Shown here one piece after another: positions 343 to 58,990 of a stretch of DNA of 64,000 nucleotides. The notes below the pieces were generated by a model. That model was given only the letters and a program-made list of their open reading frames with translations, searched no databases and had not been told where the DNA came from. Position 1 is the stretch's first letter. Each line of letters opens with the position of its first letter. A program made the translations under genes and the position numbers. Source of the stretch: Ylistrum balloti (lineage: Eukaryota); contig NW_026781876.1 of NCBI RefSeq assembly GCF_031769215.1, positions 1,054,001-1,118,000 on the forward strand, in the 5' to 3' direction.

Positions 343-513
343 CAATGTCATTTTCAGGAAGAATCAGCATGCACTCCGTGTTTTTCTTAATCTCACCTCT
401 CTCGATCTGCTTGAGTTCGATAGTGGTAGCCTTAGGCCTTTCCATGGCTGAAACGAGCTCAACTGAGCGCATTTCAATTTTACGTCTGCGCTCAAGTTCA
501 ATTTCTAGTTCTC
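343..513 (-). CDS. Exon (GELEIELERRRKIEMRS...ENDI), last coding exon seen in the window
   Basis: tttcacag acceptor; donor G|GTGACT gives 171 nt, 1/1; donor uncertain. Confidence 0.75.
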
Positions 514-3500: not shown

Positions 3501-6500
3501 CATTGTCGACCAAAAAATAAAACAAGGGAAGGAAGCCGAGCTTCAAATTTCTGCTGTATATTTCATCTTGTCGGGAAGAGGTAAGCTTTACTTCAGCCCG
3601 TACCTGTTGCAAAGAATACGACAAGCTTTAAAGATATTTACAATGTGATTAGAGTTATCTACCTTTGGGTGCTTGTCGTAGGTGTGACCTCCAGTCCTCT
3701 TTTGGCATCACATGTAATGTAGTACTGGCCTCGGCCTCACCCTCAGTGTTTTTGGCCACAACACGGATTTGTCCTGCATCATACTCTCGTACACGTGGAA
3801 TTTCAAGGTGGTGAATCATGCCATCGTAACGCAGTTTGAAACGTGTGCTCTGGAAGCCAGATATATTTAGGACATGTTAACTAGAACTTTTAGAAAAATG
3901 CTATATAAATACTTCCATACATGAGAACATCATATGTCAATCTGCTTAAACAATAATGCATTATCTTCAATAAGCTTGATGAGTGGGTGAATAGGGGTGG
4001 GTGGAGGGTGGTTAAAGGGGTCAACATCAGTATGTTTATAATTTCTCGACTCAAAGAAGAGTTTGTTTCTATATATAAGACAACAAAAAATCACTTTTTA
4101 GTATTCTCTGCTAATCAAATGTCATTTTATGGACACATACTACTAGCATAGTATGATGTCTGAACTGCTTTGTTTTTTACATTTTAATGTATTGTTCTGA
4201 GAACCGAACCTGTGGCAAATTAATTGTCAGAAGCAAATGAAACAAGAGGCCCATGGGCCTTAATGATCATCTGACATAAAAGATTTCAAATTTTGAACTT
4301 GAGAAGTCGAAAATGTGTTTTCAATATGGTGGCCATGACAGCCATGTTAGATTTCGGACCAACCCGAAATTAACAAACTTTGGTCAGGATCATGTCACGG
4401 TCATTTCAGGTAAGTTTCAACTCAATGACACATGTAGAACTTGAGAATAAGTTGGAAATGTTTACAACGGACGTCGTACGATTTCATAATTTACATTTCG
4501 TTAAAGTCAGAAATTACAAAAACTGGATTACATATCCACTATTTTTCTTGTTTAAGGATTCAAAGTAATTATTGCCATTATTAGTCACAAGCAGAATGAG
4601 TAAAATTTAAGCTTCCTCCACATTCAGTTTCCATTCAAATTACCAAACTGACCTTGAATGACCCAGAGTGACATGCGATATACTTACACCCATGATAACG
4701 GTTCCGTTGACCCACCAGTTGACACGGGGTCGTGGGTAACCGCTGACTTTGATCATGAACTTGGCGACCTCTCCTTCACCAGTTTCAACAGGTTCTGGTT
4801 TGAGATCAATTGAAGGTGGGAATCGCTCCCTCGGTTCATCAATAATTCTCTCTTCTAGGTACATGTTACTATAAAAAATCACTTTTAATGAGGTCGGTAG
4901 AATGTTTTAACAAAGAAATTATTACATGTATCTTGGTATATTTTCCATACAAAAATTCAAAGTATTTTACTATGGAAAATAGGAACTGGAATTTTTTAAA
5001 ACTTTAAAAACTTTAAATCAAATACAAAAAATAATCAGTCTGTTGCAGTCAATTAATGTAAAAAAAAAAGTGTTTTGTAAAATGAAAACAAATGAGACTT
5101 TTAAGAAATTTTTGAAATTATAATTAGCACAACTTTCAAAGAGGTAAATGTTAATGGCAGTGTTACCTTCTCCAGTATTCCTCCATCTCTTGAAGACGCA
5201 TGGCACCTTCTCCTGGAAGCTGTGTTTCCATGATGATGGACCGGCGTCCTGATAATAAAAACAGCATCATAATAAGCCTTATTTACATTTTACGCATCAC
5301 TTGATAATAACTAGACATTTTTCAGACGGAGTTTATGGTGGGGGTACATATTTTATTCAAAAATAAAATATTGATGTTTGAACATATTAAGTAAGACATT
5401 CTTACCTCTACATCGGAGAACAGCAGTTGTGGTTGCCTCCCCTTGAGAGTTGCGGGCAGTACAAGAGTATTCTCCAGAATCTTCGGGGTAGGTGTATAAA
5501 ATATCAAGGCAGACAAAGCCAAAATCATGCATGGGCTTGTAGCGATGACCTGGTTTGGAATAAAACAAGATTTTACATAAACTTAATAAAAAGTTTAAAA
5601 ATAAAGTATTTGTGATGATTAGCAGTCTGTCGTCATCACAGTTTTTTTTATATATTCTTCATACATGTATAGATATCCTGATGATTAGATAGATATTCTA
5701 TATATCATATAAAAATTCACATTTCAAAACAAATGTATTTTACATACAGTTATACAATACATTACCAGCTATTACAACTATGAGTGCATGAACCTGTATT
5801 TCTAATTTTCATTTGTCAAGTCTTGTTTAACAAGTCAAGTACAGTGAAGAAAAAAGGAGTTAAGTACAGTAGACAGTAGACAAAAGAGGAGTTAAGTACA
5901 GTAGACAAAAGAGGAGTTAATGGACCAATAATTTTATCAATCATGAAAATGATAATAGAACTCACCATGATGAAGTGGTTGTCCATCCTTAAACCACTCG
6001 ATCTCCATAGTAGGATCGCCAAGTGGAAGGAGCTTACACTCAAAGTGGGCGGAGTCATTCTCCTTCAGGCCCATCAGGTTCCTTATCTGTGTCTTGAACC
6101 AGGGTTTCTTGGGTTTATGTTTGTCATAGATGTCCTCTTGAGCAGGTGCTTCACCCTCGCGGCGGATGTACTCACGCACAGCGCTATCCTGATCTTCAAT
6201 TCTGTATAAATGGAAGAACTTATTTAATGTAAGATCATTTTAATTATCAAAGCACCTCTGTGACCTGAAGGAATGTAGTCAGTGTTTAGATGTTAGAAAA
6301 AAAGTAAAAAATTAATAATACAAATCACAAATCAAATGAAAAATATCAAAATAAAACTTTATAGTGCAAAAAATCACACGAAAGTGCAATACAATATATT
6401 TACATGATATATAACATCTTACTTATTACTTTATCACAGGCATTTTCTGCTGTGTTTGAAATTTCAGTGCTTATAAACATTGTACAATGTAGAATCTATA

Positions 6501-9500
6501 GGAAACCTGGTTCAAAAGAGGTAAATATTAGGACTGTAACAAAACATTAAAATGCAAAAGAAAAAGAATCACTCATGCAATTATATCATTAACAGTTTTC
6601 AACACATAAATGAACAAAACAAAATTAAGGAATATTTGAAATATCCAGTGTGGAAAAGCTTTCAAGGGAAATAACTCTTGAAATAAATCAGAGTAAAGAA
6701 TGACAATGTTTGTCAACTACAACCATTGCAGGGAGATAACTCTGAATAGAGTCAGAAGTAAGCATGGTTGCCCACAAAAAAAAAAAAATAACTGGGAGAC
6801 CACTCTGGAAAGATTTACAGTCTGCAATCAATATGGCTGTCTAAAACAACCATAAAAGGGAGATAACTCTTATAAGAGGTTAGTCTGGGAGTCAAACTGG
6901 TTGACAACATCTACAAAAGTGATAAAACTCTGGAAAGAAATCAAGATATTGAGGTAATTAAGGAACTGAAAAATGTCAAATTGGAAATAATGAATTTGAG
7001 GAGAAAATAAGAAGGTAAACGGATAAATAAATAAAGGAAGGAAACGTGACAAAAAACGGATTTTATTTCTATGCTTACAAAAAAAAAAAATTGTTTTCCC
7101 AGAAAAAATAATACATATATGTATATTTGTATTTTCAGATTCATTTTGAGGCTTTGAGGTTAGGGATGCATATCAAGGCTGCTGGCTTATAAAGGGAGAA
7201 GTAGAAAGTAGAGTTGACAGTTTGGGAGCTTTACACACTCCATGCCTTAGAGCGAACCTGACAAGAGACAACAAATCAGGGGCTCCCCCGATTACACCCA
7301 AATAATCCCTGTAGCAGAAATTCTCCGCGGCAAACACTCTGTGGAGGAAATCATATAACATTGTGTCAGCCACATTCAAAATCACTGAAAGCAAAGACAT
7401 AAATCATATTGACACTGGTTCTATACGACAAGAATATTGTACTAAGAACAGGTCAATTTGAAACATCTGTTATGTGTATACTGATAAAACAGAAATTTTT
7501 GATCGACCAGATCAAAGAAGAACAAATCTGTATTGATGTTGATATTTTTATCAGGTCATGAATTTTTTATACACAGCGTTTTATCATATATACAACTGCA
7601 AAAATAAAATCCTCTGTAAAGAAATCATCACGAAAAAGAAAACATACATGCTTATATATATATATATATGTACATCGTAGTTCATGCTGTAGACATGATG
7701 AAGCTATCACAGACAGTGTGTGTGAACATGGCGCAAGTCCACTGCAGGATATAAACTGATGAAACACAGAAAAGCAGTTAACTTTGTTGAGCATGACATT
7801 TGATGGGAAAAAAGGAATTTCAATCATTCAGGCACTTCTTCTATCAGATATAGTATCATTCCAAACTAAAGGTAATCGTGGGATCAGAGTGAAGACAGGT
7901 GTCGGAGTCTTATAGACATATCCTCTAGACAAAGGCAAGATTTCTGAAGCAATTTCAAACAACAGAGGTAGATACACAAAGTGACTATGATATACCTACA
8001 GGGGACATTCTGTGGTTAGGAAATTGATTGAAGTGAAAGTACAAGACTAGACAGGAATACTCATTAACCATCAACAAAGATTGAATATTTAGGATTGATA
8101 TAAAACATTCAGGTGTATATGGACAAGGTTGGTGTTTTTTTTATAAAAACATCACCAAGACATCAAAAGCATTCTGATTCAAATCAGATCTGCCTATTTT
8201 CACAAGGTGAAGTGAAGATTTCGGAACAAAGAGTGAATCTACTATCATTCTCTATAGGTGAAGATAACTCTAATCTCAGTGACGAAGGGAGGTAATTCAA
8301 ACCTCACATGCTATCTGGAGGTCTGCGCATAAAGCTAAGGACTCACAGAAGGAAATTTGATCACAAAGGGAGACAATTCAACATTCAGCAGCAACTGCAG
8401 TCAAGAGAGCTCTTCATACACAGAGGTAAGTATATCTAACCTATCCCATGTAGCTTCAATGGTTTCCTTGACTTTAATCACGTCCTTCCTCTCTGGTGAC
8501 CAGTATTCCCTGTCCTGGGACTCTCTGACAGTTGTGGCTGCCTTAGGAACTGTTGGAGCACGAACAGGTTCCCGCTGCCTAACTGGAGCGGGATCATGCA
8601 GTTGTTGTTCTTTAACCTCAATAATAAGTTTGTCCTTCGGCGGCTCAGACGTCTTGCGGACAATTCTAGCTGCTGGTACTGGTGGCTGCCCTCTACGCAG
8701 GACTGCCTGTTTGATTGTAATGGTAGCTTCCGACTTTTCTTTCTCAGAATCGGAGGGAACCATCACCATTTTTGTAAGTTCTAATGATGAGGAAGCCTCC
8801 TGTCCTTTAGGGACATAGAACTCCACTGGTGCAGGGGTTCCAGACACCGGTATATCAATTTGTGTTGCAACAGGGGACACCATTGGTGGTGATCTCCCTT
8901 GGGGCTTAGGGGACACTTTAGGGGCCACTTTCTCCTTTCTGTCACAAACAAAATCAATAGACAACACTGAATTAGCTCTGCCAAATTAGTGACCTACTGT
9001 ATTGTATTAAATATCACACTCCTACCTCCAAACCGTATCACCTAGTTCTACGATAATTGTTTATCAAGTGATCTATTTCTATATATATATTTTTTTTATC
9101 TCATTTTAATAAATTCATGTTTGCACCATATCTTTAACATTCATTTTTTTCCAGCAAAAGCTAACGAATCTATGTCAAAAATCTCAAAAGGTTTTGTTTT
9201 TTTTTTCCGTTCCTTTTGTAAGAAAAAAAAATGAATTTTGAAAGTGTGATATTTGAGAAAATCCTGAAATGAAGTGTCATTAATATTTGATCAGTGACCA
9301 ACATATAGACTTCTATACTAGACTAACAACTTTCATGCAATACAATATTTATCATAAAACAAAGTCGTTAACAATGAAACTAAAGGGCAGTTAACTCAAC
9401 ACTTAAAGAAGCAGAAATGAAAAAATATAGAAATGAAAATAAAGCTCATTTGAATGCAATAAAAAAAGTAGATTTTCTTGAGGGTGGAAACAAGAGAGAT

Positions 9501-48500: not shown

Positions 48501-51500
48501 TAACAAGTAAATATTTCAAGGTTTTGAATGACTTTATGATACATTGAAAGGAAATTCAACAAAACATTGTTAATTTATCTATGGATATTGGTAAAATATC
48601 AAAATCAAGGATAATATATCTTCTTTTTTCTGGTATATGTAATATTCAACCTTGCCATGAATAAAGGGCAGACAACTCAATGCATTTCAGTAAAAATACA
48701 GGAAAAATTAGCAAGGAGATGTTGTTAATTGTTAAATACAACAATTTTATGTAACACAATTATATCAGAGCTGTATGTAGATAAAACACAAGCTTAAGAT
48801 GGATACAATATTGACAGTAGAGAAAGGCGTTGAGTTATACAAGTCTATACTGCTACCTGTGTATGGTATTAATCACGAGCCTTTGGTAAGATGACTAGCC
48901 CATGATCTTTATTATTATATATAACAATATCCCTTATGTACACCAGGAGGAATTCAGTGGCTGGGGAAAAGATGGCAGACTGAAGGGAAGATATCCCCAT
49001 CTGCTTGTAATTCTTCTGTAAGTATACAGCCAGTTAGCCACATACTTAGTGCTACCATCATTCCAATGTATACAAAGGACAGATAACTCTCAAACCTCCA
49101 CTGATATCTAACTTAACCTTGTTCATCAGCACCTGATTGTGAAATCCTCTCATGTAATTGGTTTTAGTGGGATTTACTTTGATAGCCAGCAAAGTGATGT
49201 TTTAGAGATATATGTATAGATAGGAACATCTATATGTTGATGTCTATGTTAACTGATATCTACAGATAGGAACATCTATATGTTGATATCTGTGTTTACT
49301 GATATCTACAGATAGGAATGTTGATATCTGTGTTTACTGATATCTACAGATAGGAACATCTATATGTTGATATCTGTGTTTACTGATATCTACAGATAGG
49401 AACATCTATATGTTGATATCTGTGTTTACTGATATCAACAGATAGGAATGTTGATATCTGTGTTTACTGATATCTACAGATAGGGACATCTATATGTTGA
49501 TATCTGTGTTTACTGATATCTACAGATAGGAACATCTATATGTTGATATCTGTGTTTACTGATATCTACAGATAGGAACAACTATATGTTGATATCTGTG
49601 TTTACTGATATCTACAGAGGATAAACAAACTTTTAAAATGATTTTCATATATAAACAAACTTTGACTAAAAGAACAATTGACATTCTTTTCACTGTAATT
49701 CTGTAAAATACATTTCCAGAAAATGTTATGGAGCTGTATATATTTCTAGAAAGTATCCTCACACTATCAAGCCACAGTAAAGATGAAATTTTTCTTAAGT
49801 CGCAAAAATGATCTTGTACATTGTAGACTTACCTGTGAGGACTAACTAGGAAGGCCTGGGTAGATATCAACAATATAGACCCACTAATCACAATCAAAGA
49901 TCAGGAATAAATGTGATAATTTCCATGAGAATCCTCTGAATGCTTTTCCATATTCAAAATTTTTCCTAGGGAAATTTACCACTTAAACACAATATATTCA
50001 CCTTTCAAAAGGACTCACTGATAGAAATTCCCATACTACCGGACAAGTTCTCCAACCTGACACCTTCGCTGGCCAAATTTGCTCTAATCAAGTCAAAACT
50101 TTTCCCAACCTGACCCAAGTTGGACCCCTACCCCTATTTTCATCCCCCACCCATGGGCTTGTAGATATCATGCATGTGTACTGAATATTTACAGATCCTA
50201 AACAAGATAAGGATGACACTCTCTGGAGGTTCCAGCCAAAACTTTGATGGAAGAGCTTTCTGTTATCTGACCTATCTAAACCCTATGGGATTTATCAGTG
50301 TCTAAAACCCATGGTGTATACTGTGTTCGTTTTAATTGTGATTGCTGTTCTGAGTAGAAACTACTTAACTGCTAAAGTTTAAAGAAATGTACCTAGCTAA
50401 TTCACCAGGATGATTGAAATGATAGGGAAATTTATGTTTGTCTAAACAAATTTTACAGTAATGAAGCGTTATAATCTACATAATTCCTCTAATAAATTTA
50501 TGTACTGTTAGAAAAGGTTTTTGAAGTAAAATTTAAAAAACATTCAAATACCAAACAGCAGGATATGTAATATTAGCAGAATCAATAAATCACATTACTT
50601 TGTATTTGGGCTTTGTTTGGTTTTTTTTTTTTTTTTCAATTTTTTATTTTTCTGTTGTAGATGACTATACTTGAGTATTTCATACACTAAAACAGTACAT
50701 ATTTGTTTACACTCTGACAGAGATAAGACCACGTCTGTGCCTATACTATCAGCAGGCCCGGTCTGAGAGAGAACAGCCCAGTGGCATATCTTTGATGCAG
50801 ATAGTGATCTGATAACAGATAAAAACATATGTTATCCAACAATGTCATTTTGGATTCTTTTTAAAATTTTTATTAGATTTATAAAAATTCAAAAATAAGA
50901 ATGACAAATTTTACATTTTTTTTTTAAATAATTGTTTCATGTTCTTCATATTAACATTAAAACACTGTTACTAGCATCAGGTTAAAAAAGTTATCCTGTC
51001 TTGTGTTTTGTATTTATCAAATTTCCCGGGAAATGATTTGTCCATGTTTATTCTGACTGACAATATCTTATCATTGTGTCAATCAAGATTAATGACAAGT
51101 CAAAAGTAAAAGTAATGTTTGAAATATGCTATCACTAAGTAAATCTTTTTTAAATCCGCATTTTCGGTTTAACATGCTCCCTCTAAAATCTCTCCTTACA
51201 TTCTTTTAAAGACTTTGAGTTTGGTCTAATCATGACCCAGCCTCATCTTCAGTTTTGAGTTTGACCTAACCCTGTCGATCTGTCCTTAACCCAGCCTCAC
51301 TTTGAGTTTGGAGTTTCATCTAACCTCACCCCAAGCCTCACCATGAGTTTGGAGATTGATCTAGCCCTAACTCAGCCTCATCTTGAGTTTGGAGTTTAAT
51401 CACAGCCTCACAATGAATTTGGAGTTATGAATCTAACCGTAGCTAGCCTCACCTTGAGTTTGGCCAACATCTCGTTGTGTTCTCTCTGATACTGGAGTGC

Positions 51501-54500
51501 CTCCTCGAGTGTGGACCCTACGTCCATCAGGTCTGGTTCCATTTGGTGTACGCGCACTCTGATCCATTCTGCACCCTACAACATAAACGGTCATTCAAGG
51601 TCAACCTCTGTTACACACTTGAGTCAATTAAAACACGTCATGAGTTCAGTGCAATGTGGTCACAACTGCATACAAGTTCAAGACAACATAAATAGATACA
51701 ATTTTAGATTAAAATAATAGATCAATCACAGTCACAGACGATGGAGCAAGCCAATTCAAGGTCACAAAATCGCACAACTTCAGAAAAGATCATTGAAACA
51801 GTAAACAGTTTTGTTAAGGATCATACTTGATCACTTCCAAACAAATTAAAAATCAAACAAACTTTCAGAGTTTTATTTTCTCTCTGAAATATGTTTATGA
51901 TAAATCAAGAAAGGTCAAATAAAGGTCAAGGTCATACAATATAACTCATCTGAAATTTGACCCTTACAATACATAATGTTACATATGTTACATTATACAT
52001 GCATATTTTACACTTAATGTTAGAACATTCATATAATCCCAAAATTCCGGGGTTTTTTTTATGAAGATTAGTCCAAGACGTACCAGATGTTATCCCCCCT
52101 CCCACCCCCCTCGAGCTTGGTATACCAGCAAGTTGTGCTGGGAAGTTGTAAACTGTCGAAGATGCTTACTTCTTCCTCTATCTATTTGTGGACTATCAGA
52201 CTAGAAGCCAGAAGAGTTTATCTAGTAAATCACGGAAAGCGCTATTAACAGCTGGTATAAAGCCAGTCCACATGATTAAGGAGAGGGGAACATCATCTAA
52301 AGAGTGGAAGTACTTCAAAATGAGGAACCGGCACCAACTACTGAATTAAACGTCTGAATATAACTATATACAAAATAATACTGGGCAGCTGAAGAAAACT
52401 CTTTACTATAGATAGAGTATGAGGAAAAATAGTTCTGTAAAATGTATGGTACACTATGGCAGCATGTTCTGGTTTCTGTTGGAGGAGATTTCACAATGTT
52501 TAATCTTCAACTGGGCCTGGTTTCTTTCAGAATAAAGTTAGGTAACACAGAACCCAGCTTATAGCAGTACGCTGTGGTGTACTGGCATCTGTAAATAGAA
52601 CAGGTAACAAATTTCCAGTACAGCTGTGAGGAGCTATTTTTTGTAGAACTGCAGGTAGGTGAATGCTCACTGGAAATTTCTTACCTTCATTTTACATGGG
52701 CATGAGATATACAACCGTATCACTATCTGCCCCTTACACCCCCCCCCCCCCCCCCCCACCCCCACCTCCCTCCTACTCTGGGCTATCCTTTCCTGGCATG
52801 TGAGGGCACAGATTAGTGGTACAGGATGACCAGAATAGTAGCAGGGAGGTGATTATATTGTCCTTATGATATATAGCAAGTATAAACCACATCAATTGTG
52901 CACTTTTGAAGGAAATCAGAGTATAACCCTGAGATAACTCACATGGTCGGGTCATAGAGTTTCATGTTATATCTGAGAATCAAACCAATAATTAACTATT
53001 TTGAGAGCAAGTGATTGACCACTGCATCACATACTTAGTAACACTTTTCACAAGGGCATAATGAGGCATTAGAACAAATCATAATGTTGTGGACAACATG
53101 ACTTTCAATGGTCAATTCCAGTATCCCAGGGCATTAACATTACTGTTCAAGAAAAATGTTTGATATAGCCTCAGGACGGAGAATGGGTCCAGAATATACA
53201 GAACTGAGTGGATAGGAGCTATGGAGTGGTGCCAAAGGCGAGCTGGTACAGAATCACTACTGATAAAACTCAAAGTTTAGCTTATATTGTTGTGTTAAAC
53301 CCTAACTCTGGAGATGATCAGTCAAACTAATAACATACCAATGAGTATATCAGAGGAAACCCAACACCACAGGGTAAAGAGTTGTTATGCAGGACTTTCT
53401 GTTAATATCACAGAAAAGCACTTGACTAGGAACTCTTTTATCTGGAAGTTTTTTAACAGATTGATTTTATTTGTGAACAACCTACTGAAAAACTATTAAT
53501 TTTAAACTGCTGAATTAGGTACAAGTTGATTTACTGAGCTGTAATCATCCACAGAATCAAGTGTCCATGAAATAAATTTTATTTTTGAAAAAGCATGAAA
53601 ATTGATCCGTTCAAAATGCTTTATATAATATACTGCTAATAAAGTAATACCAAGTCATCAGTGCTCGGTAGATTTACAGCTGATCAAGTAAAACCAAGTC
53701 AGCAGTGCTCGGTAGATTTACAGCTAATAAAGTAAAACCTAGTCATCAGTGCTTGGTAGGATAAAACCAGCAGCTGATCAAGTAAAACCAAGTCATCAGT
53801 GCTTGGTAGATTTACAGCTGATCAAGTAAAACCAAGTCAGCAGTGCTTGGTAGATTTACAGCTGATCAAGTAAAACCAAGTCATCAGTGCTTGGTAGATT
53901 TACAGCTAATAAAGTAAAACCAAGTCATCAGTGCTTGGTAGATTTACAGCTGATCAAGTAAAACCAAGTCATCAGTGCTTGGTAGATTTACAGCTGATAA
54001 AGTAAAACCAAGTCATCAGTGCTCGGTAGATTTACAGCTGATCAAGTAAAACCAAGTCATCAGTGCTTGGTAGATTTAAACAGTATGAAAATTCAATACA
54101 AAATTCTTATGCTTATGTACTAACATAAATTTTAGAAATGACCCTGTCATTTAAGGATAAAAATTAATTGAAAAGTCTGTAGACCACATGGTTTGTGATA
54201 TTCTATATTTGGTCATCAGTGCGATTTTTGTATGCTTATGTACTAACATAAATTTTAGAAATGACCCTGTCATTTAAGGATAAAAATTAATTGAAAAGTC
54301 TGTAGACCACATGGTTTGTGATATTCTATATTTGGTTCGTTTTGTTGGAAAAGAATTTTCGTTACTGTAACCTAAGTTGGATATCTACGAATATTAGGTG
54401 ATAAGTCTATTGAAACAGACAAGTGGTGTTCTATGGATGGTTTTGTGAAGTCAATTTTATTTCATAGGTAAAGAAAGAATTGGGAGTAAACAGGAGAGAA

Positions 54501-57500: not shown

Positions 57501-58990
57501 TCTTTCAAGACAGGTTTTACTTCAGTAAACTTACAAGCAAAAGATGGTTTTTCAAAACAGGTTTTACTTCAGTAAACTTACAAGCAAAAGATGGTCTTTC
57601 AAGACAGGTTTTACTTCGGTCAACTTACAAGCAAAAGATTGTCTTTCAAGACAGGTTTTACTTCAGTCAACTTACAAGCAAAAGATGGTCTTTCAAGACA
57701 GGTTTTACTTCAGTCAACTTACAAGCAAAAAAAAATGTTTTTTCAAGACAGGTTTTAGACAGGTTTTACTTCAGTCAACTTACAAGCAAAAGATGGTCTT
57801 TCAAGACAGGTTTTACTTCAGTCAACTTACAAGCAAAAGATGGTCTTTCAAGACAGGTTTTACTTCAGTCAACTTACAAGCAAAAGATGGACTTTCAAGA
57901 CAGGTTTTACTTTAGTCAACTTACAAGCAAAAAAAATGTTTTTTCAAGACAGGTTTTACTTCAGTCAACTTACAAGCAAAAGATGGTCTTTCAAGAAAGG
58001 TTTTACTTCAGTCAATTTGAAAACAAAAGATGGTCTTGTTACAAGCAAAAGGCAGTCTTTCAATGTATAATTCAATGTATGATGGACCTGTGTTAATATA
58101 GGTAGAATGTATATTCTACATGAATTTGTTTGGTTGAAAAGATTTAGATGGATTTCATTTCGTTTGGAAGGAGGAGGGTTATGTGTGGGTGTGTGGGTGT
58201 GCGGGGGAGTAAGTGGTGTAATTTTCATGCACTTTAAGATTTTATTCTCCACAAATGAGAAACAATTATATTCAGCATAATCTGGAAACCTTAAACATAA
58301 GACCATCACAAAAGGGCCTTTTTCTATAGTGATTTTAGATAGACTATGAAATCCTACATCCAGAAATATCTATATATAAACACAGGTAACCAGACCTACT
58401 GGTAGTTAGAACTTTGAAGAGACCTGGAAACACTGCGTTAAACACCCTCCTCATTACAGGTCTATATATAGTATCACAGGCAAAGGGTATAAAAATTCCT
58501 GACTAATTTGAAACAGGAAGTTGTTGTTTACATCAAAATACTGTGAAGATAGGAATAGAGGTAGATTGAGGAAACTTCCATAAGTAGATCTACACAGGCA
58601 CTTTAGTATGAAGCATGACAAAAATTAACCCATTTATACATGTATCACTTCTAAACACTTTGTTCTATATTCAGAAATTGTATGTATTGATAAACTTTTA
58701 TCAAAAGTTAAAATTATATTGAAAAAAATTCCTTATATATTTCAGGTATATCAATGTACAGTTATTGACCTCTAATGATATATGAAATTGAAAGGGTTCA
58801 TAAAACACATTAACCACACATTCCATGCATGTTATTTGCTATAACTAATGCTAGCAATCCTTGTGTTACTTACTCGTAATATTGCGAGTACAACTTTTGA
58901 GCGACCAGATTGTACTGCCACTGTACTAATAGTCGTTGTGGAGGGCGAAAGCTCCGAAAGGTCCGTTATATCCGATAAACTGTCCGACAT
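343..58990 (-). CDS. sls: Giant multi-exon titin/sallimus-like muscle protein (CCDC141/Zormin spectrin rod + Ig array + kettin-like Ig); 3' end lies outside the window
   Basis: About 60 GT-AG exons joined with consistent phases. The N-terminus STTTISTVAVQSGRSKVVLAILR-GAEW...EMLAKLK resembles remembered CCDC141 N-termini. 15 I-set Ig domains with W and D-x-G-x-Y-x-C cores. KPWFKTQIRNLMGLKENDSAHFECKLLPLGDPTMEIEWF is a kettin/titin Z7-type Ig. Confidence 0.85.
648..662 (-). CDS. Microexon 15 nt (VCPAN)
   Basis: ttttttatgcacag acceptor, ATG|GTATGA donor, 1/1. Confidence 0.4.
1787..1819 (-). CDS. Microexon 33 nt (EYEEEVVEVYT)
   Basis: tttacag acceptor, CAG|GTAAGA donor, 1/1. Confidence 0.65.
2133..2162 (-). 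CDS. Microexon 30 nt (EVIQTVSDYP)
   Basis: ctgac...attgcag acceptor, G|GTGACA donor, 1/1. Confidence 0.45.
3013..3039 (-). CDS. Microexon 27 nt (EMELEGESV)
   Basis: ctttacag acceptor, G|GTAAGT donor, 1/1. Confidence 0.6.
3663..3849 (-). CDS. Exon: Ig15 C-half + EDWRSHLRQAP motif
   Basis: 187 nt, 0/1. Confidence 0.9.
4241..4481 (+). mobile_element. 3'-truncated copy of the same HINE-like element
   Basis: Near-identical to 38703-38930 (gatttcggaccaacccgaaattaacaaactt...caggatcatgtcacg). Confidence 0.7.
4688..4868 (-). CDS. Exon: Ig15 N-half
   Basis: 181 nt, 2/0; KVSGYPRPRVNWWVNG. Confidence 0.9.
5167..5248 (-). CDS. Exon: kettin-type inter-Ig linker (RRSIIMETQLPG...EEYWR)
   Basis: 82 nt, 1/2. 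Confidence 0.85.
5406..5549 (-). CDS. Exon: Ig14 C-half
   Basis: 144 nt, 1/1; HDFGFVCLDILYTYPEDSGEYSC. Confidence 0.93.
5966..6201 (-). CDS. Exon: kettin/titin-Z7-like Ig14 N-half
   Basis: 236 nt, 2/1; AHFECKLLPLGDPTMEIEWFKDG. Confidence 0.93.
6664..6931 (+). repeat. Degenerate array of a GGGAGATAACTCT motif at about 64-bp period
   Basis: Motif at about 6666, 6731, 6794, 6858, 6919. Confidence 0.6.
7173..7338 (-). CDS. Candidate alternative terminal exon (VFAAENF...FALRHGVCKAPKL...SQQP*)
   Basis: Two phase-2 acceptors (exon starts 7338, 7257) in one open frame; stop 7173-7175; AATAAA at 7062-7067 followed by a U/GU-rich tract. Confidence 0.45.
8441..8938 (-). CDS. PEVK-like exon (KEKVAPKVSP...IEATWD)
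   Basis: 498 nt, 2/2 using donor AG|GTTAGA; read-through stops at TGA 8401-8403. Confidence 0.85.
9833..10036 (-). CDS. Pro-rich exon (PVKPPQQRKKK...MFEP)
   Basis: 204 nt, 2/2. Confidence 0.85.
10672..10740 (-). CDS. Cassette exon (YDDRPKHEPQLPASLQTKYKQF)
   Basis: 69 nt, 2/2, GC island in an AT-rich intron. Confidence 0.62.
11782..11868 (-). CDS. Cassette exon (SVSMERPRLPMPKPRTLTVLSSTEEEYD)
   Basis: 87 nt, 2/2, acceptor cttgtag, donor CG|GTAGGG. Confidence 0.65.
11855..12012 (+). repeat. 56-bp tandem repeat overlapping a splice acceptor
   Basis: Units start at 11855, 11911, 11967. Confidence 0.88.
12240..13041 (-). promoter_or_regulatory. Intronic cluster of RBFOX-type (U)GCAUG splicing elements
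   Basis: 12 CATGC on + (8 as CATGCA) in about 800 nt downstream of exon YDI-C. Confidence 0.6.
12760..12880 (+). repeat. 26-bp tandem repeat, about 4.5 copies, carrying UGCAUG on the sense strand
   Basis: cttgaaatcctcaacatgcagatctt. Confidence 0.9.
13069..13179 (-). CDS. Cassette exon YDI-C (YDIQSEGPVQMITYVSDTEAGYLRLVSEDELDSSRS)
   Basis: 111 nt, 2/2, donor AG|GTGCGG. Confidence 0.72.
13438..13941 (-). CDS. Pro-rich exon with 4x 11-aa SPVRHVQPPxP repeat
   Basis: 504 nt, 2/2, long open GC-rich frame, 33-bp coding repeat at about 13500-13625. Confidence 0.88.
14317..14442 (-). CDS. Pro-rich cassette exon (PAAKPHTQKP...VIKRR)
   Basis: 126 nt, 2/2, donor AA|GTTAGT. Confidence 0.75.
15346..15441 (+). 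repeat. 24-bp tandem repeat x4
   Basis: aattgaagttgtctttaaatttt(a/g). Confidence 0.88.
16057..16167 (-). CDS. Cassette exon YDI-B (WYDIHKEGPVQQISYASELESGTLRLKGTPTPPKED)
   Basis: 111 nt, 2/2, acceptor gcttttag, donor AG|GTTGGT. Confidence 0.72.
16599..16700 (-). CDS. Cassette exon YDI-A (HYDIQSEGLVQQISYSTEAGSALMRLIKEEDAS)
   Basis: 102 nt, 2/2; strong acceptor ttccccacag, weak donor GTTCAT; read-through stops at TAG 16568-16570. Confidence 0.65.
17128..17287 (-). CDS. Exon 45, Pro-rich linker (AEMPKPEP...SQSPP)
   Basis: 160 nt, 1/2, donor CC|GTAAGT. Confidence 0.85.
17759..17889 (-). CDS. Exon 44, Ig13 C-half
   Basis: 131 nt, 2/1. Confidence 0.92.
18205..18367 (-). CDS. Exon 43, Ig13 N-half
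   Basis: 163 nt, 1/2. Confidence 0.92.
18773..18905 (-). CDS. Exon 42, Ig12 C-half
   Basis: 133 nt, 0/1; DAGTYMC. Confidence 0.9.
19040..19244 (-). CDS. Exon 41, Ig12 N-half
   Basis: 205 nt, 2/0. Confidence 0.9.
19382..19626 (-). CDS. Exon 40, Ig11 C-half
   Basis: 245 nt, 0/2; IAWYKNGHRIK...LPEDAGHFT. Confidence 0.92.
19869..20108 (-). CDS. Exon 39, FEQRL motif + Ig11 N-half
   Basis: 240 nt, 0/0. Confidence 0.9.
20255..20589 (-). CDS. Exon 38, Pro-rich/PEVK-like linker
   Basis: 335 nt, 1/0, donor CAA|GTGAGT. Confidence 0.87.
20950..21095 (-). CDS. Exon 37, Ig10 C-half
   Basis: 146 nt, 2/1; DAGEYTC. Confidence 0.92.
21387..21624 (-). CDS. Exon 36, linker + Ig10 N-half
   Basis: 238 nt, 1/2. 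Confidence 0.9.
22016..22274 (-). CDS. Exon 35, Ig9
   Basis: 259 nt, 0/1. Confidence 0.93.
22689..23050 (-). CDS. Exon 34, PEVK-like linker + start of Ig9
   Basis: 362 nt, 1/0, P/E/V/K rich. Confidence 0.9.
23686..23973 (-). CDS. Exon 33, Ig8
   Basis: 288 nt, 1/1. Confidence 0.93.
24311..24508 (-). CDS. Exon 32, Ig7 C-half
   Basis: 198 nt, 1/1. Confidence 0.92.
24978..25300 (-). CDS. Exon 31, Thr-rich linker + Ig7 N-half
   Basis: 323 nt, 2/1. Confidence 0.9.
25543..25769 (-). CDS. Exon 30, Ig6 C-half
   Basis: 227 nt, 0/2. Confidence 0.9.
26368..26700 (-). CDS. Exon 29, Ig5 C-half + Ig6 N-half
   Basis: 333 nt, 0/0. Confidence 0.92.
27025..27212 (-). CDS. Exon 28, Ig5 N-half
   Basis: 188 nt, 1/0. 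Confidence 0.93.
27550..27730 (-). CDS. Exon 27, Ig4 C-half
   Basis: 181 nt, 0/1; DSGLYRC. Confidence 0.93.
27978..28116 (-). CDS. Exon 26, Ig4 N-half
   Basis: 139 nt, 2/0; VRLDCVITGHPEPE. Confidence 0.9.
28420..28568 (-). CDS. Exon 25, Ig3 C-half
   Basis: 149 nt, 0/2; DSGTYKV. Confidence 0.9.
28680..28935 (+). mobile_element. Degenerate HINE-like core fragment
   Basis: tgaccttga/ggtca and gaagaag...tttaaag core motifs shared with 61.9-62.2 kb. Confidence 0.4.
29066..29220 (-). CDS. Exon 24, Ig3 N-half
   Basis: 155 nt, 1/0; GSPTPEVTWYRND. Confidence 0.9.
30213..30509 (-). CDS. Exon 23, Ig2
   Basis: 297 nt, 1/1; FECHVTGIPSPTISWYKD. Confidence 0.93.
31024..31244 (-). CDS. Exon 22, Ig1
   Basis: 221 nt, 2/1; VTLECQV...WYKD...DTARYTC. 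Confidence 0.93.
31366..31493 (-). CDS. Exon 21, linker + start of Ig1
   Basis: 128 nt, 0/2; QPPKITLHLRDAEVMEGEK. Confidence 0.88.
32117..32419 (-). CDS. Exon 20, end of rod (SEQWIREG...LVQAQ)
   Basis: 303 nt, 0/0. Confidence 0.9.
32771..32962 (-). CDS. Exon 19, rod (LIEKKIDM...TLIEE)
   Basis: 192 nt, 0/0. Confidence 0.9.
33131..33253 (-). CDS. Exon 18, rod (IHSEIDDL...EMTVQ)
   Basis: 123 nt, 0/0. Confidence 0.88.
33568..33717 (-). CDS. Exon 17, rod (DAEAAAQE...YDLRQ)
   Basis: 150 nt, 0/0. Confidence 0.9.
33884..34060 (-). CDS. Exon 16, rod (LDKLIEKT...RVRQT)
   Basis: 177 nt, 0/0. Confidence 0.9.
34523..34711 (-). CDS. Exon 15, rod (SAIEELDK...RNLDQ)
   Basis: 189 nt, 0/0. Confidence 0.9.
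36048..36176 (-). CDS. Exon 14b (TIDRVMTTENEFFFPNIAGYLGNSTTSAEDLQKKIDDFTPAFK), duplicate of 14a
   Basis: 129 nt, 0/0, intact tgtag acceptor and AAG|GTAATT donor, open frame. Confidence 0.8.
36703..36828 (-). CDS. Exon 14a (TIDWVLKIENDFFPVIGGDLGTSIETANEFQHRLDEFTPTFE), candidate mutually exclusive exon
   Basis: 126 nt, 0/0, paralogous to 14b. Confidence 0.88.
37941..37998 (+). repeat. 18-bp tandem repeat x3
   Basis: ttaccgggcatgggctta. Confidence 0.85.
38192..38371 (-). CDS. Exon 13, rod (VTDDSTLNV...QDARK)
   Basis: 180 nt, 0/0. Confidence 0.9.
38703..38991 (+). mobile_element. Non-autonomous Helentron-type (HINE-like) element, apparently complete
   Basis: Starts AACAAGAGGCCCATGGGCC; subterminal inverted GGTCATCTGA/TCAGATGACC; 3' hairpin then TAAAAA; second copy at 4241. 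Confidence 0.7.
39141..39311 (-). CDS. Exon 12, rod (LTTSMSGL...FQNSST)
   Basis: 171 nt, 0/0, donor ACA|GTAAGA. Confidence 0.85.
40009..40200 (-). CDS. Exon 11, rod (DKNAELEAL...KLVQQ)
   Basis: 192 nt, 0/0. Confidence 0.9.
40529..40651 (-). CDS. Exon 10, rod (LQTWLTSIG...EQDLR)
   Basis: 123 nt, 0/0. Confidence 0.88.
41266..41379 (-). CDS. Exon 9, rod (MTLLQDRC...EHFNS)
   Basis: 114 nt, 0/0. Confidence 0.88.
41471..41730 (+). repeat. 29/30-bp minisatellite, about 9 copies
   Basis: gcctagctatcacctctgacaccccaggag. Confidence 0.92.
41943..42140 (-). CDS. Exon 8, rod (ALTKLEQV...GVRRR)
   Basis: 198 nt, 0/0. Confidence 0.9.
42594..42785 (-). CDS. Exon 7, rod (HIQQTVVRL...FDQAET)
   Basis: 192 nt, 0/0. 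Confidence 0.9.
43367..43486 (-). CDS. Exon 6, rod (VLDWYRTVG...FETQAK)
   Basis: 120 nt, 0/0, spectrin helix-A Trp. Confidence 0.88.
43740..43984 (-). CDS. Exon 5, rod (ILEASKST...LLELLQDRRRRL...EVNK)
   Basis: 245 nt, 1/0; LLELLQDRRR matches the remembered CCDC141 motif. Confidence 0.92.
44141..44249 (-). CDS. Exon 4, rod (FSSKMEQAQG...HQEIKT)
   Basis: 109 nt, 0/1. Confidence 0.9.
44374..44565 (-). CDS. Exon 3, spectrin-like rod (AKEDEVKK...FHKSAHE)
   Basis: 192 nt, AG/GT, 0/0. Confidence 0.9.
44611..45853. mobile_element. Possible TIR MITE remnant flanking the HINE-like insert
   Basis: Inverted match 44615-44637 vs 45828-45850 (20/23), TA at the left end. Confidence 0.4.
45195..45691 (+). 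mobile_element. HINE-like element with an internal 104-bp tandem duplication (45276-45483)
   Basis: AACTAGAA start, tgacctt core motifs, ...GCATAAAAA end. Confidence 0.5.
46350..46512. promoter_or_regulatory. Putative intronic muscle enhancer: MEF2 site, near-CArG, CCAAT
   Basis: CTAAAAATAACCC at 46361; CCTTATATAG at 46479; ATTGG near 46507. Confidence 0.3.
49219..49619 (+). repeat. 46/37-bp minisatellite
   Basis: gataggaacatctatatgttgatatctgtgtttactgatatctaca, with 9-bp deletion variants. Confidence 0.92.
51235..51463 (+). repeat. Degenerate 30-55-bp tandem array containing the exon-2 donor
   Basis: Recurrent gcctca(c/t)nntgagtttgg. Confidence 0.7.
51453..51575 (-). CDS. Exon 2 (GAEWIRVRVHQMEPDLMDVGSTLEEALQYQREHNEMLAKLK)
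   Basis: Not in the ORF track; tgtag acceptor, AAG|GTGAGG donor, 123 nt, 0/0. Confidence 0.88.
53636..54078 (+). repeat. 44-bp minisatellite, about 10 copies
   Basis: caagtcatcagtgcttggtagatttacagctgatcaagtaaaac. Confidence 0.93.
54108..54335 (+). repeat. 123-bp direct tandem duplication
   Basis: tatgcttatgtactaac...ttctatatttgg twice. Confidence 0.9.
56960..58065 (+). repeat. 47-bp minisatellite, about 23 copies
   Basis: caagacaggttttacttcagtcaacttacaagcaaaagatggtcttt. Confidence 0.95.
58874..58990 (-). CDS. Coding exon 1 (MSDSLSD...VVLAILR), CCDC141-like N-terminus
   Basis: aaaATG start, 117 nt, donor CGA|GTAAGT, phase 0. Confidence 0.88.

What the first reader, a model, noticed from the sequence alone, without database searches (positions are those of the whole stretch)
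343..58990. CCDC141/Zormin spectrin rod spliceable in frame into titin/kettin Z-disc Ig domains in one gene
Seen: the exons chain with matching phases from ATG 58990 through the rod, 13 Ig domains and the Pro-rich spacer into the kettin-type Ig14/15, with no obligatory stop. Known (from memory): the N-terminus aligns with vertebrate CCDC141 (STTT.S.VAVQ.G.SK.V.A; LLELLQDRRR), and Ig15 plus EDWRSHLRQAP aligns with titin Z8 (EDFRSVLRRAP). Human CCDC141 lies immediately upstream of TTN on the same strand, and Drosophila Zormin comes from the 5' part of the sls locus. Inference: a lophotrochozoan fused form would support an ancestral bilaterian CCDC141-titin gene, with vertebrate CCDC141/TTN adjacency being a fission relic.
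Basis: partly seen in the sequence, partly recalled or inferred. Interest (0 to 1): 0.75.

Follow-up and report, generated by a model that had tools for sequence, protein, structure and literature searches.

The report
Scallop CCDC141-titin fused muscle gene
This scallop DNA holds the first 59 exons of one already-annotated giant muscle gene whose front end matches vertebrate CCDC141 and whose later domains match the start of titin, which supports an idea published in 2025 that these two neighbouring human genes were once one.

Summary
The window is Ylistrum balloti (scallop) DNA. RefSeq protein XP_060064415.1 ('titin-like, partial', 7355 aa) is encoded exactly, residues 1-3794, by 59 minus-strand exons from ATG 58990 to about 397. 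All 58 junctions are GT-AG and in phase. Pfam finds a spectrin-type rod, 13 I-set Ig domains, a Pro-rich spacer, then Ig14 and Ig15.

It barely matches Trio or kalirin and does not match spectrin. Ig8-Ig15 match fish titin's second to ninth Ig domains in order. Ig15 best matches the solved titin domain 6dl4.

The same fused architecture is annotated in hemichordate, amphioxus, octopus, brachiopod, flatworm and arthropod models. The ancestral-fusion idea is already published ('connectitin', Hanashima 2025; fly sls/Zormin, Burkart 2007).

No RNA run was available, so splicing in this species rests on the RefSeq model and on cross-phylum collinearity.

Verdict: correct, well read, and largely known already. 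It adds a lophotrochozoan member and some modest new detail.

The parts
58874..58990 (-). Exon 1: start codon and the conserved CCDC141-type N-terminal motif
   Evidence: Residues 1-39 of XP_060064415.1 match exactly. Identity is 62% to eel CCDC141 residues 10-35 and 60% to residues 1-42 of a Macrostomum protein.
32117..51575 (-). Exons 2-20: the spectrin-type rod (protein residues about 40-1112)
   Evidence: Pfam finds Spectrin x5, Spectrin_7 at residues 571-672, and DUF7799/Spectrin_SESTD1. The rod is collinear with CCDC141, Saccoglossus, amphioxus and arthropod proteins.
36048..36176 (-). Alternative copy of exon 14 ('14b'), not used in the RefSeq model
   Evidence: It has an open frame and splice sites. 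The octopus protein matches this copy rather than 36828-36703. Saccoglossus matches both copies.
17759..31493 (-). Exons 21-44: Ig1-Ig13, with Pro-rich linkers at 23050-22689 and 20589-20255
   Evidence: Pfam finds 13 I-set domains. Ig8-Ig12 each best-hit fish titin's second to sixth Ig, in order. Introns here are 121-992 nt and many Ig domains are split across two exons.
7258..17287 (-). Exons 45-53: Pro-rich, PEVK-like spacer between Ig13 and Ig14; exons 46-53 are phase-2 symmetric cassettes
   Evidence: Exon lengths are 102, 504, 111, 87, 69, 204, 498 and 81 nt, and all start in phase 2. Composition is 18% Pro and 45% P+E+V+K. The same position holds about 53 residues in Saccoglossus and fish, and 350-880 Pro-rich residues in octopus and Lingula.
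8401..8440 (-). Read-through tail of exon 52 ending in a stop codon; a possible end of a shorter isoform
   Evidence: If the GTTAGA donor at 8440 is not used, the frame runs 13 more codons to TGA at 8403-8401. This is an inference with no RNA support.
5406..6201 (-). Exons 54-55: linker and Ig14
   Evidence: Pfam finds I-set. The best hit is Saccoglossus 3114-3209 (53% identity), and in fish titin the eighth Ig (84 bits against 50 for the next best). Exon 54 has an AG acceptor and no usable start codon.
5167..5248 (-). Exon 56: short linker between Ig14 and Ig15
   Evidence: Exact match to XP_060064415.1 residues 3606-3632.
3663..4868 (-). Exons 57-58: Ig15 with the KEDWRSHLRQAP tail
   Evidence: PDB 6dl4 (titin) is the best hit for the second half, E 6.5e-8. 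For the first half it scores E 5.9e-12, second only to a construct with several titin Ig copies. The best hit in fish titin is 2762-2861, 113 bits against 53 for the next best. The fish tail reads KEDFRTILRRAP.
397..513 (-). Exon 59: charged linker; the gene continues beyond the window
   Evidence: Exact match to residues 3756-3794, followed by a GT donor. The public protein continues for another 3560 residues with at least 14 more I-set domains.

Best explanation
The window carries the 5' half of a single scallop (Ylistrum balloti) muscle gene, already in RefSeq as XP_060064415.1 'titin-like, partial'.

The gene product reads as follows:
- A CCDC141/Zormin-type N-terminus and a spectrin-repeat rod of about 1100 residues.
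- An array of 13 Ig domains. The later ones are orthologous, in order, to the Z-disc Ig domains of vertebrate titin.
- A Pro-rich, PEVK-like spacer.
- Ig14 and Ig15, then further kettin-type Ig domains outside the window.

The spacer is built from phase-2 symmetric cassette exons. Exon skipping can therefore shorten or lengthen it without breaking the frame.

Shown here: the exon chain, the domain content, the orthology, and the existence of the same fused architecture in gene models of other phyla.

Inferred:
- Full-length transcripts exist in this animal.
- The product works as a sarcomere-associated filament, with an Ig-rich actin/Z-disc-binding part and a tunable spring.
- The vertebrate CCDC141 and TTN genes arose by splitting such a gene somewhere between the equivalents of Ig1 and Ig8.
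For: Gene structure and domains:
- The public protein maps exactly onto 59 GT-AG exons.
- Pfam architecture is as described.

Rod:
- The rod is collinear with three vertebrate CCDC141 proteins, 141-205 bits. Trio gives 44 bits, kalirin 39 bits and spectrin nothing.
- A single 1030-column alignment to the fish CCDC141 part gives E 4e-75.
- Spectrin_7 sits at residues 571-672 in both the scallop protein and eel CCDC141.

Ig domains:
- Ig8, 9, 10, 11, 12, 14 and 15 each best-hit the fish titin Ig in the matching order.
- 6dl4 (titin) is the best solved match for the second half of Ig15, and the best single-domain match for the first half.

Other phyla:
- Saccoglossus XP_006823021.1 aligns collinearly over residues 34-3356 in 32 HSPs. 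Its Ig13-like and Ig14-like domains lie about 50 residues apart in one protein.
- Fused rod-plus-Ig models also exist in Branchiostoma belcheri, Octopus, Lingula, Macrostomum, Centruroides and insects.
- Assembled contigs too short to hold introns carry rod plus Ig1-8 in one ORF: 2519 aa on 8023 nt, 2132 aa on 6560 nt, and 2086 aa on 6580 nt.

Literature: PMC12198301 and PMC12657953.
Against: - There is no RNA evidence for this species. The only run that holds the stretch is genomic DNA.
- The RefSeq model is a computed prediction marked partial, and the evidence behind it is not visible here.
- The donor at 8441 is weak (GTTAGA), and read-through reaches a stop after 13 codons.
- The 81-nt bridging exon 7338-7258 turned up in no other protein seen here.
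- A search across the junction found no spliced fragment spanning it.
- Ig13, and the CCDC141 Ig domain, have no clear one-to-one partner.
- The fish reference is itself a merged CCDC141+TTN annotation whose first titin Ig is truncated.
Confidence: 0.82

Rival explanations
1. There are two products or two transcription units. A Zormin-like protein (rod, Ig1-13, spacer) ends by read-through of exon 52 at the stop at 8403-8401. A separate kettin-like protein starts from an internal promoter between 8.4 and 6.2 kb. On this view the joined form is rare or absent.
For: - The donor at 8441 is weak, and a stop follows 13 codons later.
- Introns of 1.1 kb lie on either side of a non-conserved 81-nt exon.
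- Fly sls and vertebrate titin are known to use internal ends and starts. This is established knowledge, supported by Burkart 2007 as cited in PMC12657953.
- Arthropod short isoforms of about 2500 aa exist.
- Pinctada and Elysia annotations contain short fragments that begin near Ig14.
Against: - Exon 54 starts at an AG acceptor in phase 2 and has no plausible start codon.
- In Saccoglossus and in fish titin the equivalents of Ig13 and Ig14 sit about 53 residues apart in one protein.
- Octopus, Lingula and scorpion models also run through this point.
- Short isoforms alongside the long form would not contradict the main reading.
Confidence: 0.12
2. The fused model is an annotation artefact. 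The prediction software merged two adjacent same-strand genes, one CCDC141-like and one titin-like, as appears to have happened in a catfish record.
For: [quoted passage not shown]
- Branchiostoma lanceolatum annotates a separate 1712-aa rod protein where B. belcheri has a fused one.
- Lingula's model ends 119 nt before a second, 9807-aa gene on the same strand, which shows how arbitrary such boundaries can be.
Against: - Between the rod and the first titin-like Ig domains, introns are only 121-992 nt. Many Ig domains are split across two exons, which leaves no room for a gene end plus a promoter.
- Intron-free assembled contigs from relatives carry rod plus Ig1-8 in one ORF.
- Spider and scorpion proteins align in one piece across scallop residues 6-2136 and 1-1957.
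Confidence: 0.04
3. The rod is a generic spectrin-family segment (a Trio/kalirin, SESTD1 or spectrin paralogue) and not an orthologue of CCDC141.
For: - One exon (43984-43740) also hits Trio proteins in the whole-library search, 35-48% identity.
- Pfam reports Spectrin_SESTD1 weakly on the same stretch as DUF7799.
Against: - Trio and kalirin match only that one repeat, at 39-44 bits. CCDC141 matches collinearly from the N-terminal exon to the last rod exon.
- Mollusc spectrins give no hit.
- The SESTD1-like first 880 residues of a crinoid protein give no hit in the window.
- An arthropod rod query finds CCDC141 at E 1e-66 with 99% coverage, ahead of Trio at 1e-50 with 40% coverage.
Confidence: 0.02

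Closest known systems
RefSeq XP_060064415.1, 'titin-like, partial' [Ylistrum balloti]
   Same: It is the same gene. Residues 1-3794 are encoded exactly by the window's 59 exons.
   Different: The public name does not mention the CCDC141/Zormin-type front end. The model omits alternative exons present in the window, for example 36176-36048 and 16167-16057. It is a computed prediction whose evidence I could not inspect.
Drosophila sallimus (sls): Zormin plus kettin/D-titin isoforms from one locus (Burkart 2007, as cited in PMC12198301 and PMC12657953)
   Same: A spectrin-repeat-plus-Ig product lies 5' of kettin-type Ig arrays on one strand, with transcripts reported to span both. Arthropod sls-type models align to scallop residues 6-2136 in one piece. 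Ig14/15 match housefly kettin-like residues 3938-4204 at 39% identity.
   Different: The fly protein itself was not fetched or compared. Insects have many more Ig domains between the Ig13-like and Ig14-like positions. The scallop has a Pro-rich spacer there instead.
Vertebrate CCDC141 followed by TTN (Z-disc part)
   Same: The rod has the same length and repeat order, with Spectrin_7 at residues 571-672 in both, and the same N-terminal motif. Titin's second to ninth Ig domains are in the same order as scallop Ig8-Ig15.
   Different: In mammals these are transcribed from two genes (PMC12657953). CCDC141 keeps a single Ig where the scallop has several before the titin-like ones. There is no long Pro-rich spacer between the seventh and eighth titin Ig. 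Titin's FN3 repeats and kinase were not seen in the available scallop model.
Saccoglossus kowalevskii XP_006823021.1 'titin-like' (6732 aa), with similar models in Branchiostoma belcheri, Octopus bimaculoides, Lingula anatina, Macrostomum lignano and Centruroides vittatus
   Same: The same fused architecture in the same domain order: rod, Ig array, then the Ig14/15 equivalents.
   Different: The hemichordate has about 53 residues where the scallop has a spacer of about 600. All of these are predictions.
'Connectitin' (Hanashima et al. 2025, PMC12198301): a proposed ancestral SESTD1-CCDC141-titin gene, seen as one gene in cnidarians and placozoans
   Same: The CCDC141 and titin parts are joined in one gene, which is the core of that hypothesis.
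   Different: No SEC14/SESTD1 part is joined here. The protein starts at the CCDC141-type N-terminus, and nothing SESTD1-like lies in the 5 kb upstream. The paper describes bilaterians as having three separate genes and does not describe mollusc gene structure.

Membership tests
CCDC141 / Zormin | Conserved N-terminal motif at the very start of the protein | tested here: met
   Window 58948-58871 matches eel CCDC141 residues 10-35 at 62% identity. The motif is visible in eel and caecilian CCDC141, amphioxus and Saccoglossus.
CCDC141 / Zormin | A spectrin-repeat rod of about 1000-1100 residues, collinear over its whole length and with the same repeat types in the same places | tested here: met
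   Scallop 110-1114 aligns to the fish CCDC141 part 1-1015 at E 4e-75. Spectrin_7 lies at 571-672 in both the scallop protein and eel CCDC141. DUF7799 lies near residue 140-250 in the scallop, amphioxus and crinoid proteins.
CCDC141 / Zormin | Closer to CCDC141 than to Trio/kalirin, SESTD1 or spectrin | tested here: met
   CCDC141 gives 141-205 bits in 3-5 collinear HSPs. Trio gives 44 bits, kalirin 39 bits and spectrin none. The SESTD1-like part of crinoid XP_033111497.1 gives no hit. No phylogeny was made.
CCDC141 / Zormin | I-set Ig domain(s) after the rod | tested here: met
   13 I-set domains follow directly. Which of them corresponds to CCDC141's single Ig is unresolved. Ig7 scores best at 71 bits, followed by Ig11 at 65.
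CCDC141 / Zormin | Direct similarity to Drosophila melanogaster Zormin | not tested
   No fly sequence was fetched. Arthropod sls-type models named 'titin isoform' or 'unc-89-like' were used instead.
Titin/connectin Z-disc region (sls / I-connectin / kettin type) | Z-disc Ig domains orthologous and in the same order | tested here: met
   Seven of the eight domains Ig8-Ig15 have as best hit the fish titin Ig in the matching position. For Ig13 the matching domain ranks third. A collinear chain gives 944 bits.
Titin/connectin Z-disc region (sls / I-connectin / kettin type) | Match to an experimentally solved titin Z-disc-end domain | tested here: met
   6dl4 (titin) scores E 6.5e-8 and 5.9e-12 for the two halves of Ig15. 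The fish orthologue hits 6dl4 at E 1.2e-55. That 6dl4 is the domain called ZIg10 comes from my memory only.
Titin/connectin Z-disc region (sls / I-connectin / kettin type) | Pro-rich (PEVK-like) extensible segments | tested here: inconclusive
   Composition fits: 17-23% Pro and 45-56% P+E+V+K in three segments. Elasticity cannot be tested with these tools.
Vertebrate-type full titin | FN3 super-repeats and a C-terminal kinase | tested here: not met
   Neither is present in residues 3800-7355 of the public model. That model is partial and lies outside the window. I therefore file the gene under the sls/I-connectin type, not as a full vertebrate-type titin.
Vertebrate-type full titin | Alpha-actinin-binding Z-repeats and telethonin-binding Z1Z2 | not tested
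   Ig8 best-hits the fish second Ig, which matches the solved Z1Z2 structures. Binding motifs were not examined.
'Connectitin' (SESTD1-CCDC141-titin as one gene) | SEC14/CRAL-TRIO domain and SESTD1 spectrin repeats at the N-terminus of the same gene | tested here: not met
   The protein starts at ATG 58990, as does the Macrostomum orthologue. No SESTD1-like hit lies in 59-64 kb. A neighbouring SESTD1 gene further upstream cannot be checked from the window.
'Connectitin' (SESTD1-CCDC141-titin as one gene) | CCDC141 part and titin part joined in one gene | tested here: met
   Met at the level of the gene model and exon phases. Transcripts were not testable.

The most novel reading that the evidence does not exclude
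Scallops, together with other spiralians, hemichordates and perhaps amphioxus, still make one polypeptide in which the CCDC141 rod is covalently continuous with titin's Z-disc Ig domains. The vertebrate split then happened inside an Ig array, between the equivalents of Ig1 and Ig8, with loss of several Ig domains. That would make the reported CCDC141-titin binding in mouse heart a relic of a once intramolecular link. Separately, spiralians inserted an alternatively spliced Pro-rich spring of 350-880 residues between the equivalents of titin's seventh and eighth Ig domains. This would be a spring position not shared with vertebrates, and so an independent origin of titin-type elasticity.
Probability: 0.4. 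Interest if true: 0.5.

Novelty: new member of a known kind. Interest (0 to 1): 0.3.

Why it matters
The result gives an independent, lophotrochozoan data point for a hypothesis published in 2025: that CCDC141 and titin descend from one gene.

It refines that hypothesis in three ways:
- Many bilaterian gene models keep the two parts joined, so the split looks vertebrate-specific rather than bilaterian-wide.
- Titin's Z-disc Ig domains can be matched one-for-one with scallop Ig8-Ig15.
- The break point maps inside an Ig array.

It also shows that public 'titin-like' names in invertebrates hide a CCDC141 orthologue. That matters for anyone studying CCDC141, a human heart-rate and cardiomyopathy locus, in model invertebrates.

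It changes no major view, and the gene model itself is already public.

Tried and rejected
- RNA evidence. The look-up of sequencing runs returned one run only. Laying it on the stretch showed even depth of about 10 across introns, with SNPs, so it is genomic DNA from another individual. No splice information was obtained.
- Junction-spanning fragments. A word search with public residues 3380-3580 found nine proteins. Most were genomic single-exon ORFs or short annotation fragments that begin at or near Ig14. One partial Elysia annotation carries Pro-rich sequence directly upstream of Ig14. None bridged the scallop exon 52/53/54 junctions.
I could therefore not look for a SESTD1 neighbour on the scallop contig. 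The Lingula locus shows no called gene in the 10 kb upstream.
- Cluster look-ups of the closest short hits gave no organism names.
- A findings search by words found nothing.
- My own splice-chain finder recovered the overall chain. It mis-called several small exons, for example false exons at 52792 and 8334, and missed others. I replaced it with exact mapping of the public protein.
- Rejected readings: the rod as Trio, SESTD1 or spectrin, and 8441/6201 as the boundary matching the vertebrate CCDC141/titin split.

Full report
**What is there**

The window has about 35% G+C and no assembly gaps. On the minus strand, a long series of short open stretches translate to spectrin-like, Ig-like and Pro-rich peptides.

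A crude splice-aware chain search of my own linked 51 of these stretches in compatible phases, from an ATG at 58990 to the left end of the window. Pfam scans of single exons, given by reference, found the following:
- DUF7799 in exon 43984-43740 (E 3.5e-14)
- one Spectrin_7 repeat split over two exons (39311-39141 and 38371-38192)
- weak Spectrin hits
- clear I-set Ig hits

**Identity of the gene**

I searched one rod exon against the whole representative library. Besides many short fragments, it returned giant proteins carrying the match near residue 180. These included Saccoglossus 'titin-like' (6732 aa), Macrostomum Ig proteins (5074-6790 aa), arthropod 'titin' and 'unc-89-like' isoforms, and an amphioxus 1712-aa protein. 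Trio proteins came in at lower identity.

A word search with the first 3400 residues of the Saccoglossus protein returned XP_060064415.1, 'titin-like, partial' from the scallop Ylistrum balloti. Mapping this protein onto the window showed the following:
- Residues 1-3794 are encoded exactly by 59 exons from 58990 to about 397.
- All 58 junctions can be placed at GT...AG.
- The window is therefore this species' genome, and the fused gene model is already public.
- RefSeq adds an 81-nt exon (7338-7258) between 8441 and 6201, and an 82-nt exon between Ig14 and Ig15.
- Exons 46-53 all begin in phase 2 and are multiples of 3 in length. Skipping any of them keeps the frame.

Pfam on the public protein gives:

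| Residues | Pfam content |
|---|---|
| 1-1120 | 5 Spectrin, Spectrin_7, DUF7799/Spectrin_SESTD1 |
| 1100-2890 | 13 I-set |
| 2870-3800 | 2 I-set, after a spacer of about 600 residues |
| 3800-7355 | at least 14 more I-set; no FN3, no kinase |

**Is the rod CCDC141?**

A word search with an arachnid-like rod returned arthropod sls-type proteins first. Vertebrate CCDC141 followed at E about 1e-66 with 97-99% coverage. Trio came next at 1e-50 with 40% coverage, then kalirin and spectrins.

I then compared these proteins directly with the window:

| Query | Result on the rod region |
|---|---|
| Three vertebrate CCDC141 proteins | 3-5 collinear HSPs, 141-205 bits |
| Amphioxus 1712-aa protein | 552 bits |
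| Saccoglossus 'titin-like' | 814 bits |
| Mollusc Trio | one HSP, 44 bits |
| Kalirin | one HSP, 39 bits |
| Mollusc spectrins | no hit |

The two fish CCDC141 chains run from the first coding exon to the last rod exon. The first-exon match is 62% identical over 26 residues.

At protein level, scallop 110-1114 aligns in one piece with residues 1-1015 of the CCDC141 part of a catfish model (E 4e-75). Spectrin_7 occupies residues 571-672 in both scallop and eel.

**Are the Ig domains titin's?**

Catfish record KAF5903363.1 is a merged annotation of CCDC141 (residues 1-1500) and the start of TTN. Its residues 1590-1703 match the solved Z1Z2 structures, and its residues 2737-2851 match 6dl4.

Domain by domain, scallop Ig8, 9, 10, 11, 12, 14 and 15 each have as best hit the fish titin Ig in the corresponding order, from the second to the ninth. 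For Ig13 the expected partner ranks third. Ig15 and its tail align at 50% identity, and the fish tail reads KEDFRTILRRAP. 6dl4 is the best solved match for the second half of Ig15. For the first half it is second only to a construct holding several copies of titin Ig domains.

This means the titin-like part of the scallop gene starts upstream of the 8441/6201 junction, at Ig8 (23973-23686) at the latest. The vertebrate break point maps somewhere between Ig1 and Ig8. I could not place it more finely, for two reasons. The fish model's first titin Ig is truncated, and CCDC141's single Ig has no clear partner.

**One gene?**

No RNA run is available. The single run that holds the stretch is genomic DNA. 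A search across the junction found no spliced fragment. The case for one gene therefore rests on four other points.
1. The RefSeq model itself.
2. Exon 54 starts at an AG acceptor in phase 2 and has no plausible start codon.
3. Between the rod and Ig8, introns are only 121-992 nt and many Ig domains are split across exons.
4. Other species have the same order in single proteins.
   - Saccoglossus residues 34-3356 are collinear with the window in 32 HSPs. Its Ig13-like and Ig14-like domains are about 50 residues apart.
   - The same holds for Macrostomum, Lingula, Octopus, Branchiostoma belcheri and a scorpion.
   - Three assembled contigs too short to hold introns carry rod plus Ig1-8 in one ORF.

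A shorter isoform ending by read-through of exon 52 (stop at 8403-8401) is possible and untested.

**The spacer**

The segment between Ig13 and Ig14 has about 600 residues, 18% Pro, and is encoded by cassette exons. It has counterparts of about 350 residues in Octopus and about 880 residues in Lingula, both Pro-rich. Only about 53 residues sit there in Saccoglossus and in fish titin.

**What is known**

Hanashima et al. 2025 (PMC12198301) proposed that SESTD1, CCDC141 and titin descend from one gene, which they call 'connectitin'. They equated Zormin with CCDC141 and noted transcripts spanning the neighbouring genes in human and fly. A second paper repeats this (PMC12657953). The first paper uses oyster and octopus only in domain trees. 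It describes bilaterians as having three genes.

What is added here:
- a mollusc instance
- evidence that many bilaterian gene models keep CCDC141 and titin joined
- the domain-for-domain map
- the position of the spiralian spacer

**A limit I kept**

I did not send any joined translation of my own to a search tool. Exons were searched by reference, and for full-length comparisons I used the public protein.

**Verdict**

Novelty is low to moderate.

Noticed in passing
window 36048-36176 and 36703-36828: There are two paralogous copies of rod exon 14, 129 and 126 nt long, both phase 0. RefSeq uses 36828-36703. The octopus protein matches the other copy better, and Saccoglossus matches both. This fits mutually exclusive exons.
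   Followed up: partly
window 16057-16167, 16599-16700, 13069-13179; also Lingula XP_013393635.1 residues about 2860-3010: The short cassette exons in the spacer share a motif of the form Y-D/Q-I...I-S/T-Y-x-S/D-E...G. A similar motif occurs twice in the Pro-rich spacer of the brachiopod protein. It may therefore be a conserved binding or folding element and not filler.
   Followed up: partly
crinoid protein XP_033111497.1 (P0068): This protein is named 'triple functional domain protein-like'. Pfam shows CRAL_TRIO_2 and Spectrin_SESTD1 followed by DUF7799 and Spectrin_7. Its residues 881-1564 are collinear with the scallop rod. It is thus a gene model that joins a SESTD1-like part to a CCDC141-like rod in an echinoderm.
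   Followed up: partly
L001 (Lingula contig LFEI02000868.1) 56353-56472: The Lingula 'titin' model (4184 aa) ends 119 nt before a second same-strand gene of 9807 aa. This is probably one gene cut in two by the annotation.
   Followed up: no
window 4143-4504: Summed contig depth in the DNA run jumps from about 10 to 1400-3400 here, inside the intron between exons 57 and 58. This points to a high-copy repeat.
   Followed up: no
window 56890-58100: Intron 1 holds plus-strand ATG ORFs of 195 and 199 aa. On the minus strand it has a tandemly repeated peptide-like unit (57219-56950). This may be a mobile element or satellite. It was not examined.
   Followed up: no
window 41480-41760: The minus-strand translation shows a tandem repeat of about 27 nt (peptide unit like IARPPGVSGV) in an intron of the rod region.
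   Followed up: no
Branchiostoma proteins CAH1249860.1 (P0023), P0310 and XP_019626721.1 (P0284): B. lanceolatum annotates the rod protein separately, named 'MYLK' (1712 aa, with five Ig domains). A 5149-aa Ig protein named 'OBSCN' was seen on a contig of identical length, probably the same contig. B. belcheri has one fused 6752-aa model. The state in amphioxus is therefore unclear from annotation alone.
   Followed up: no
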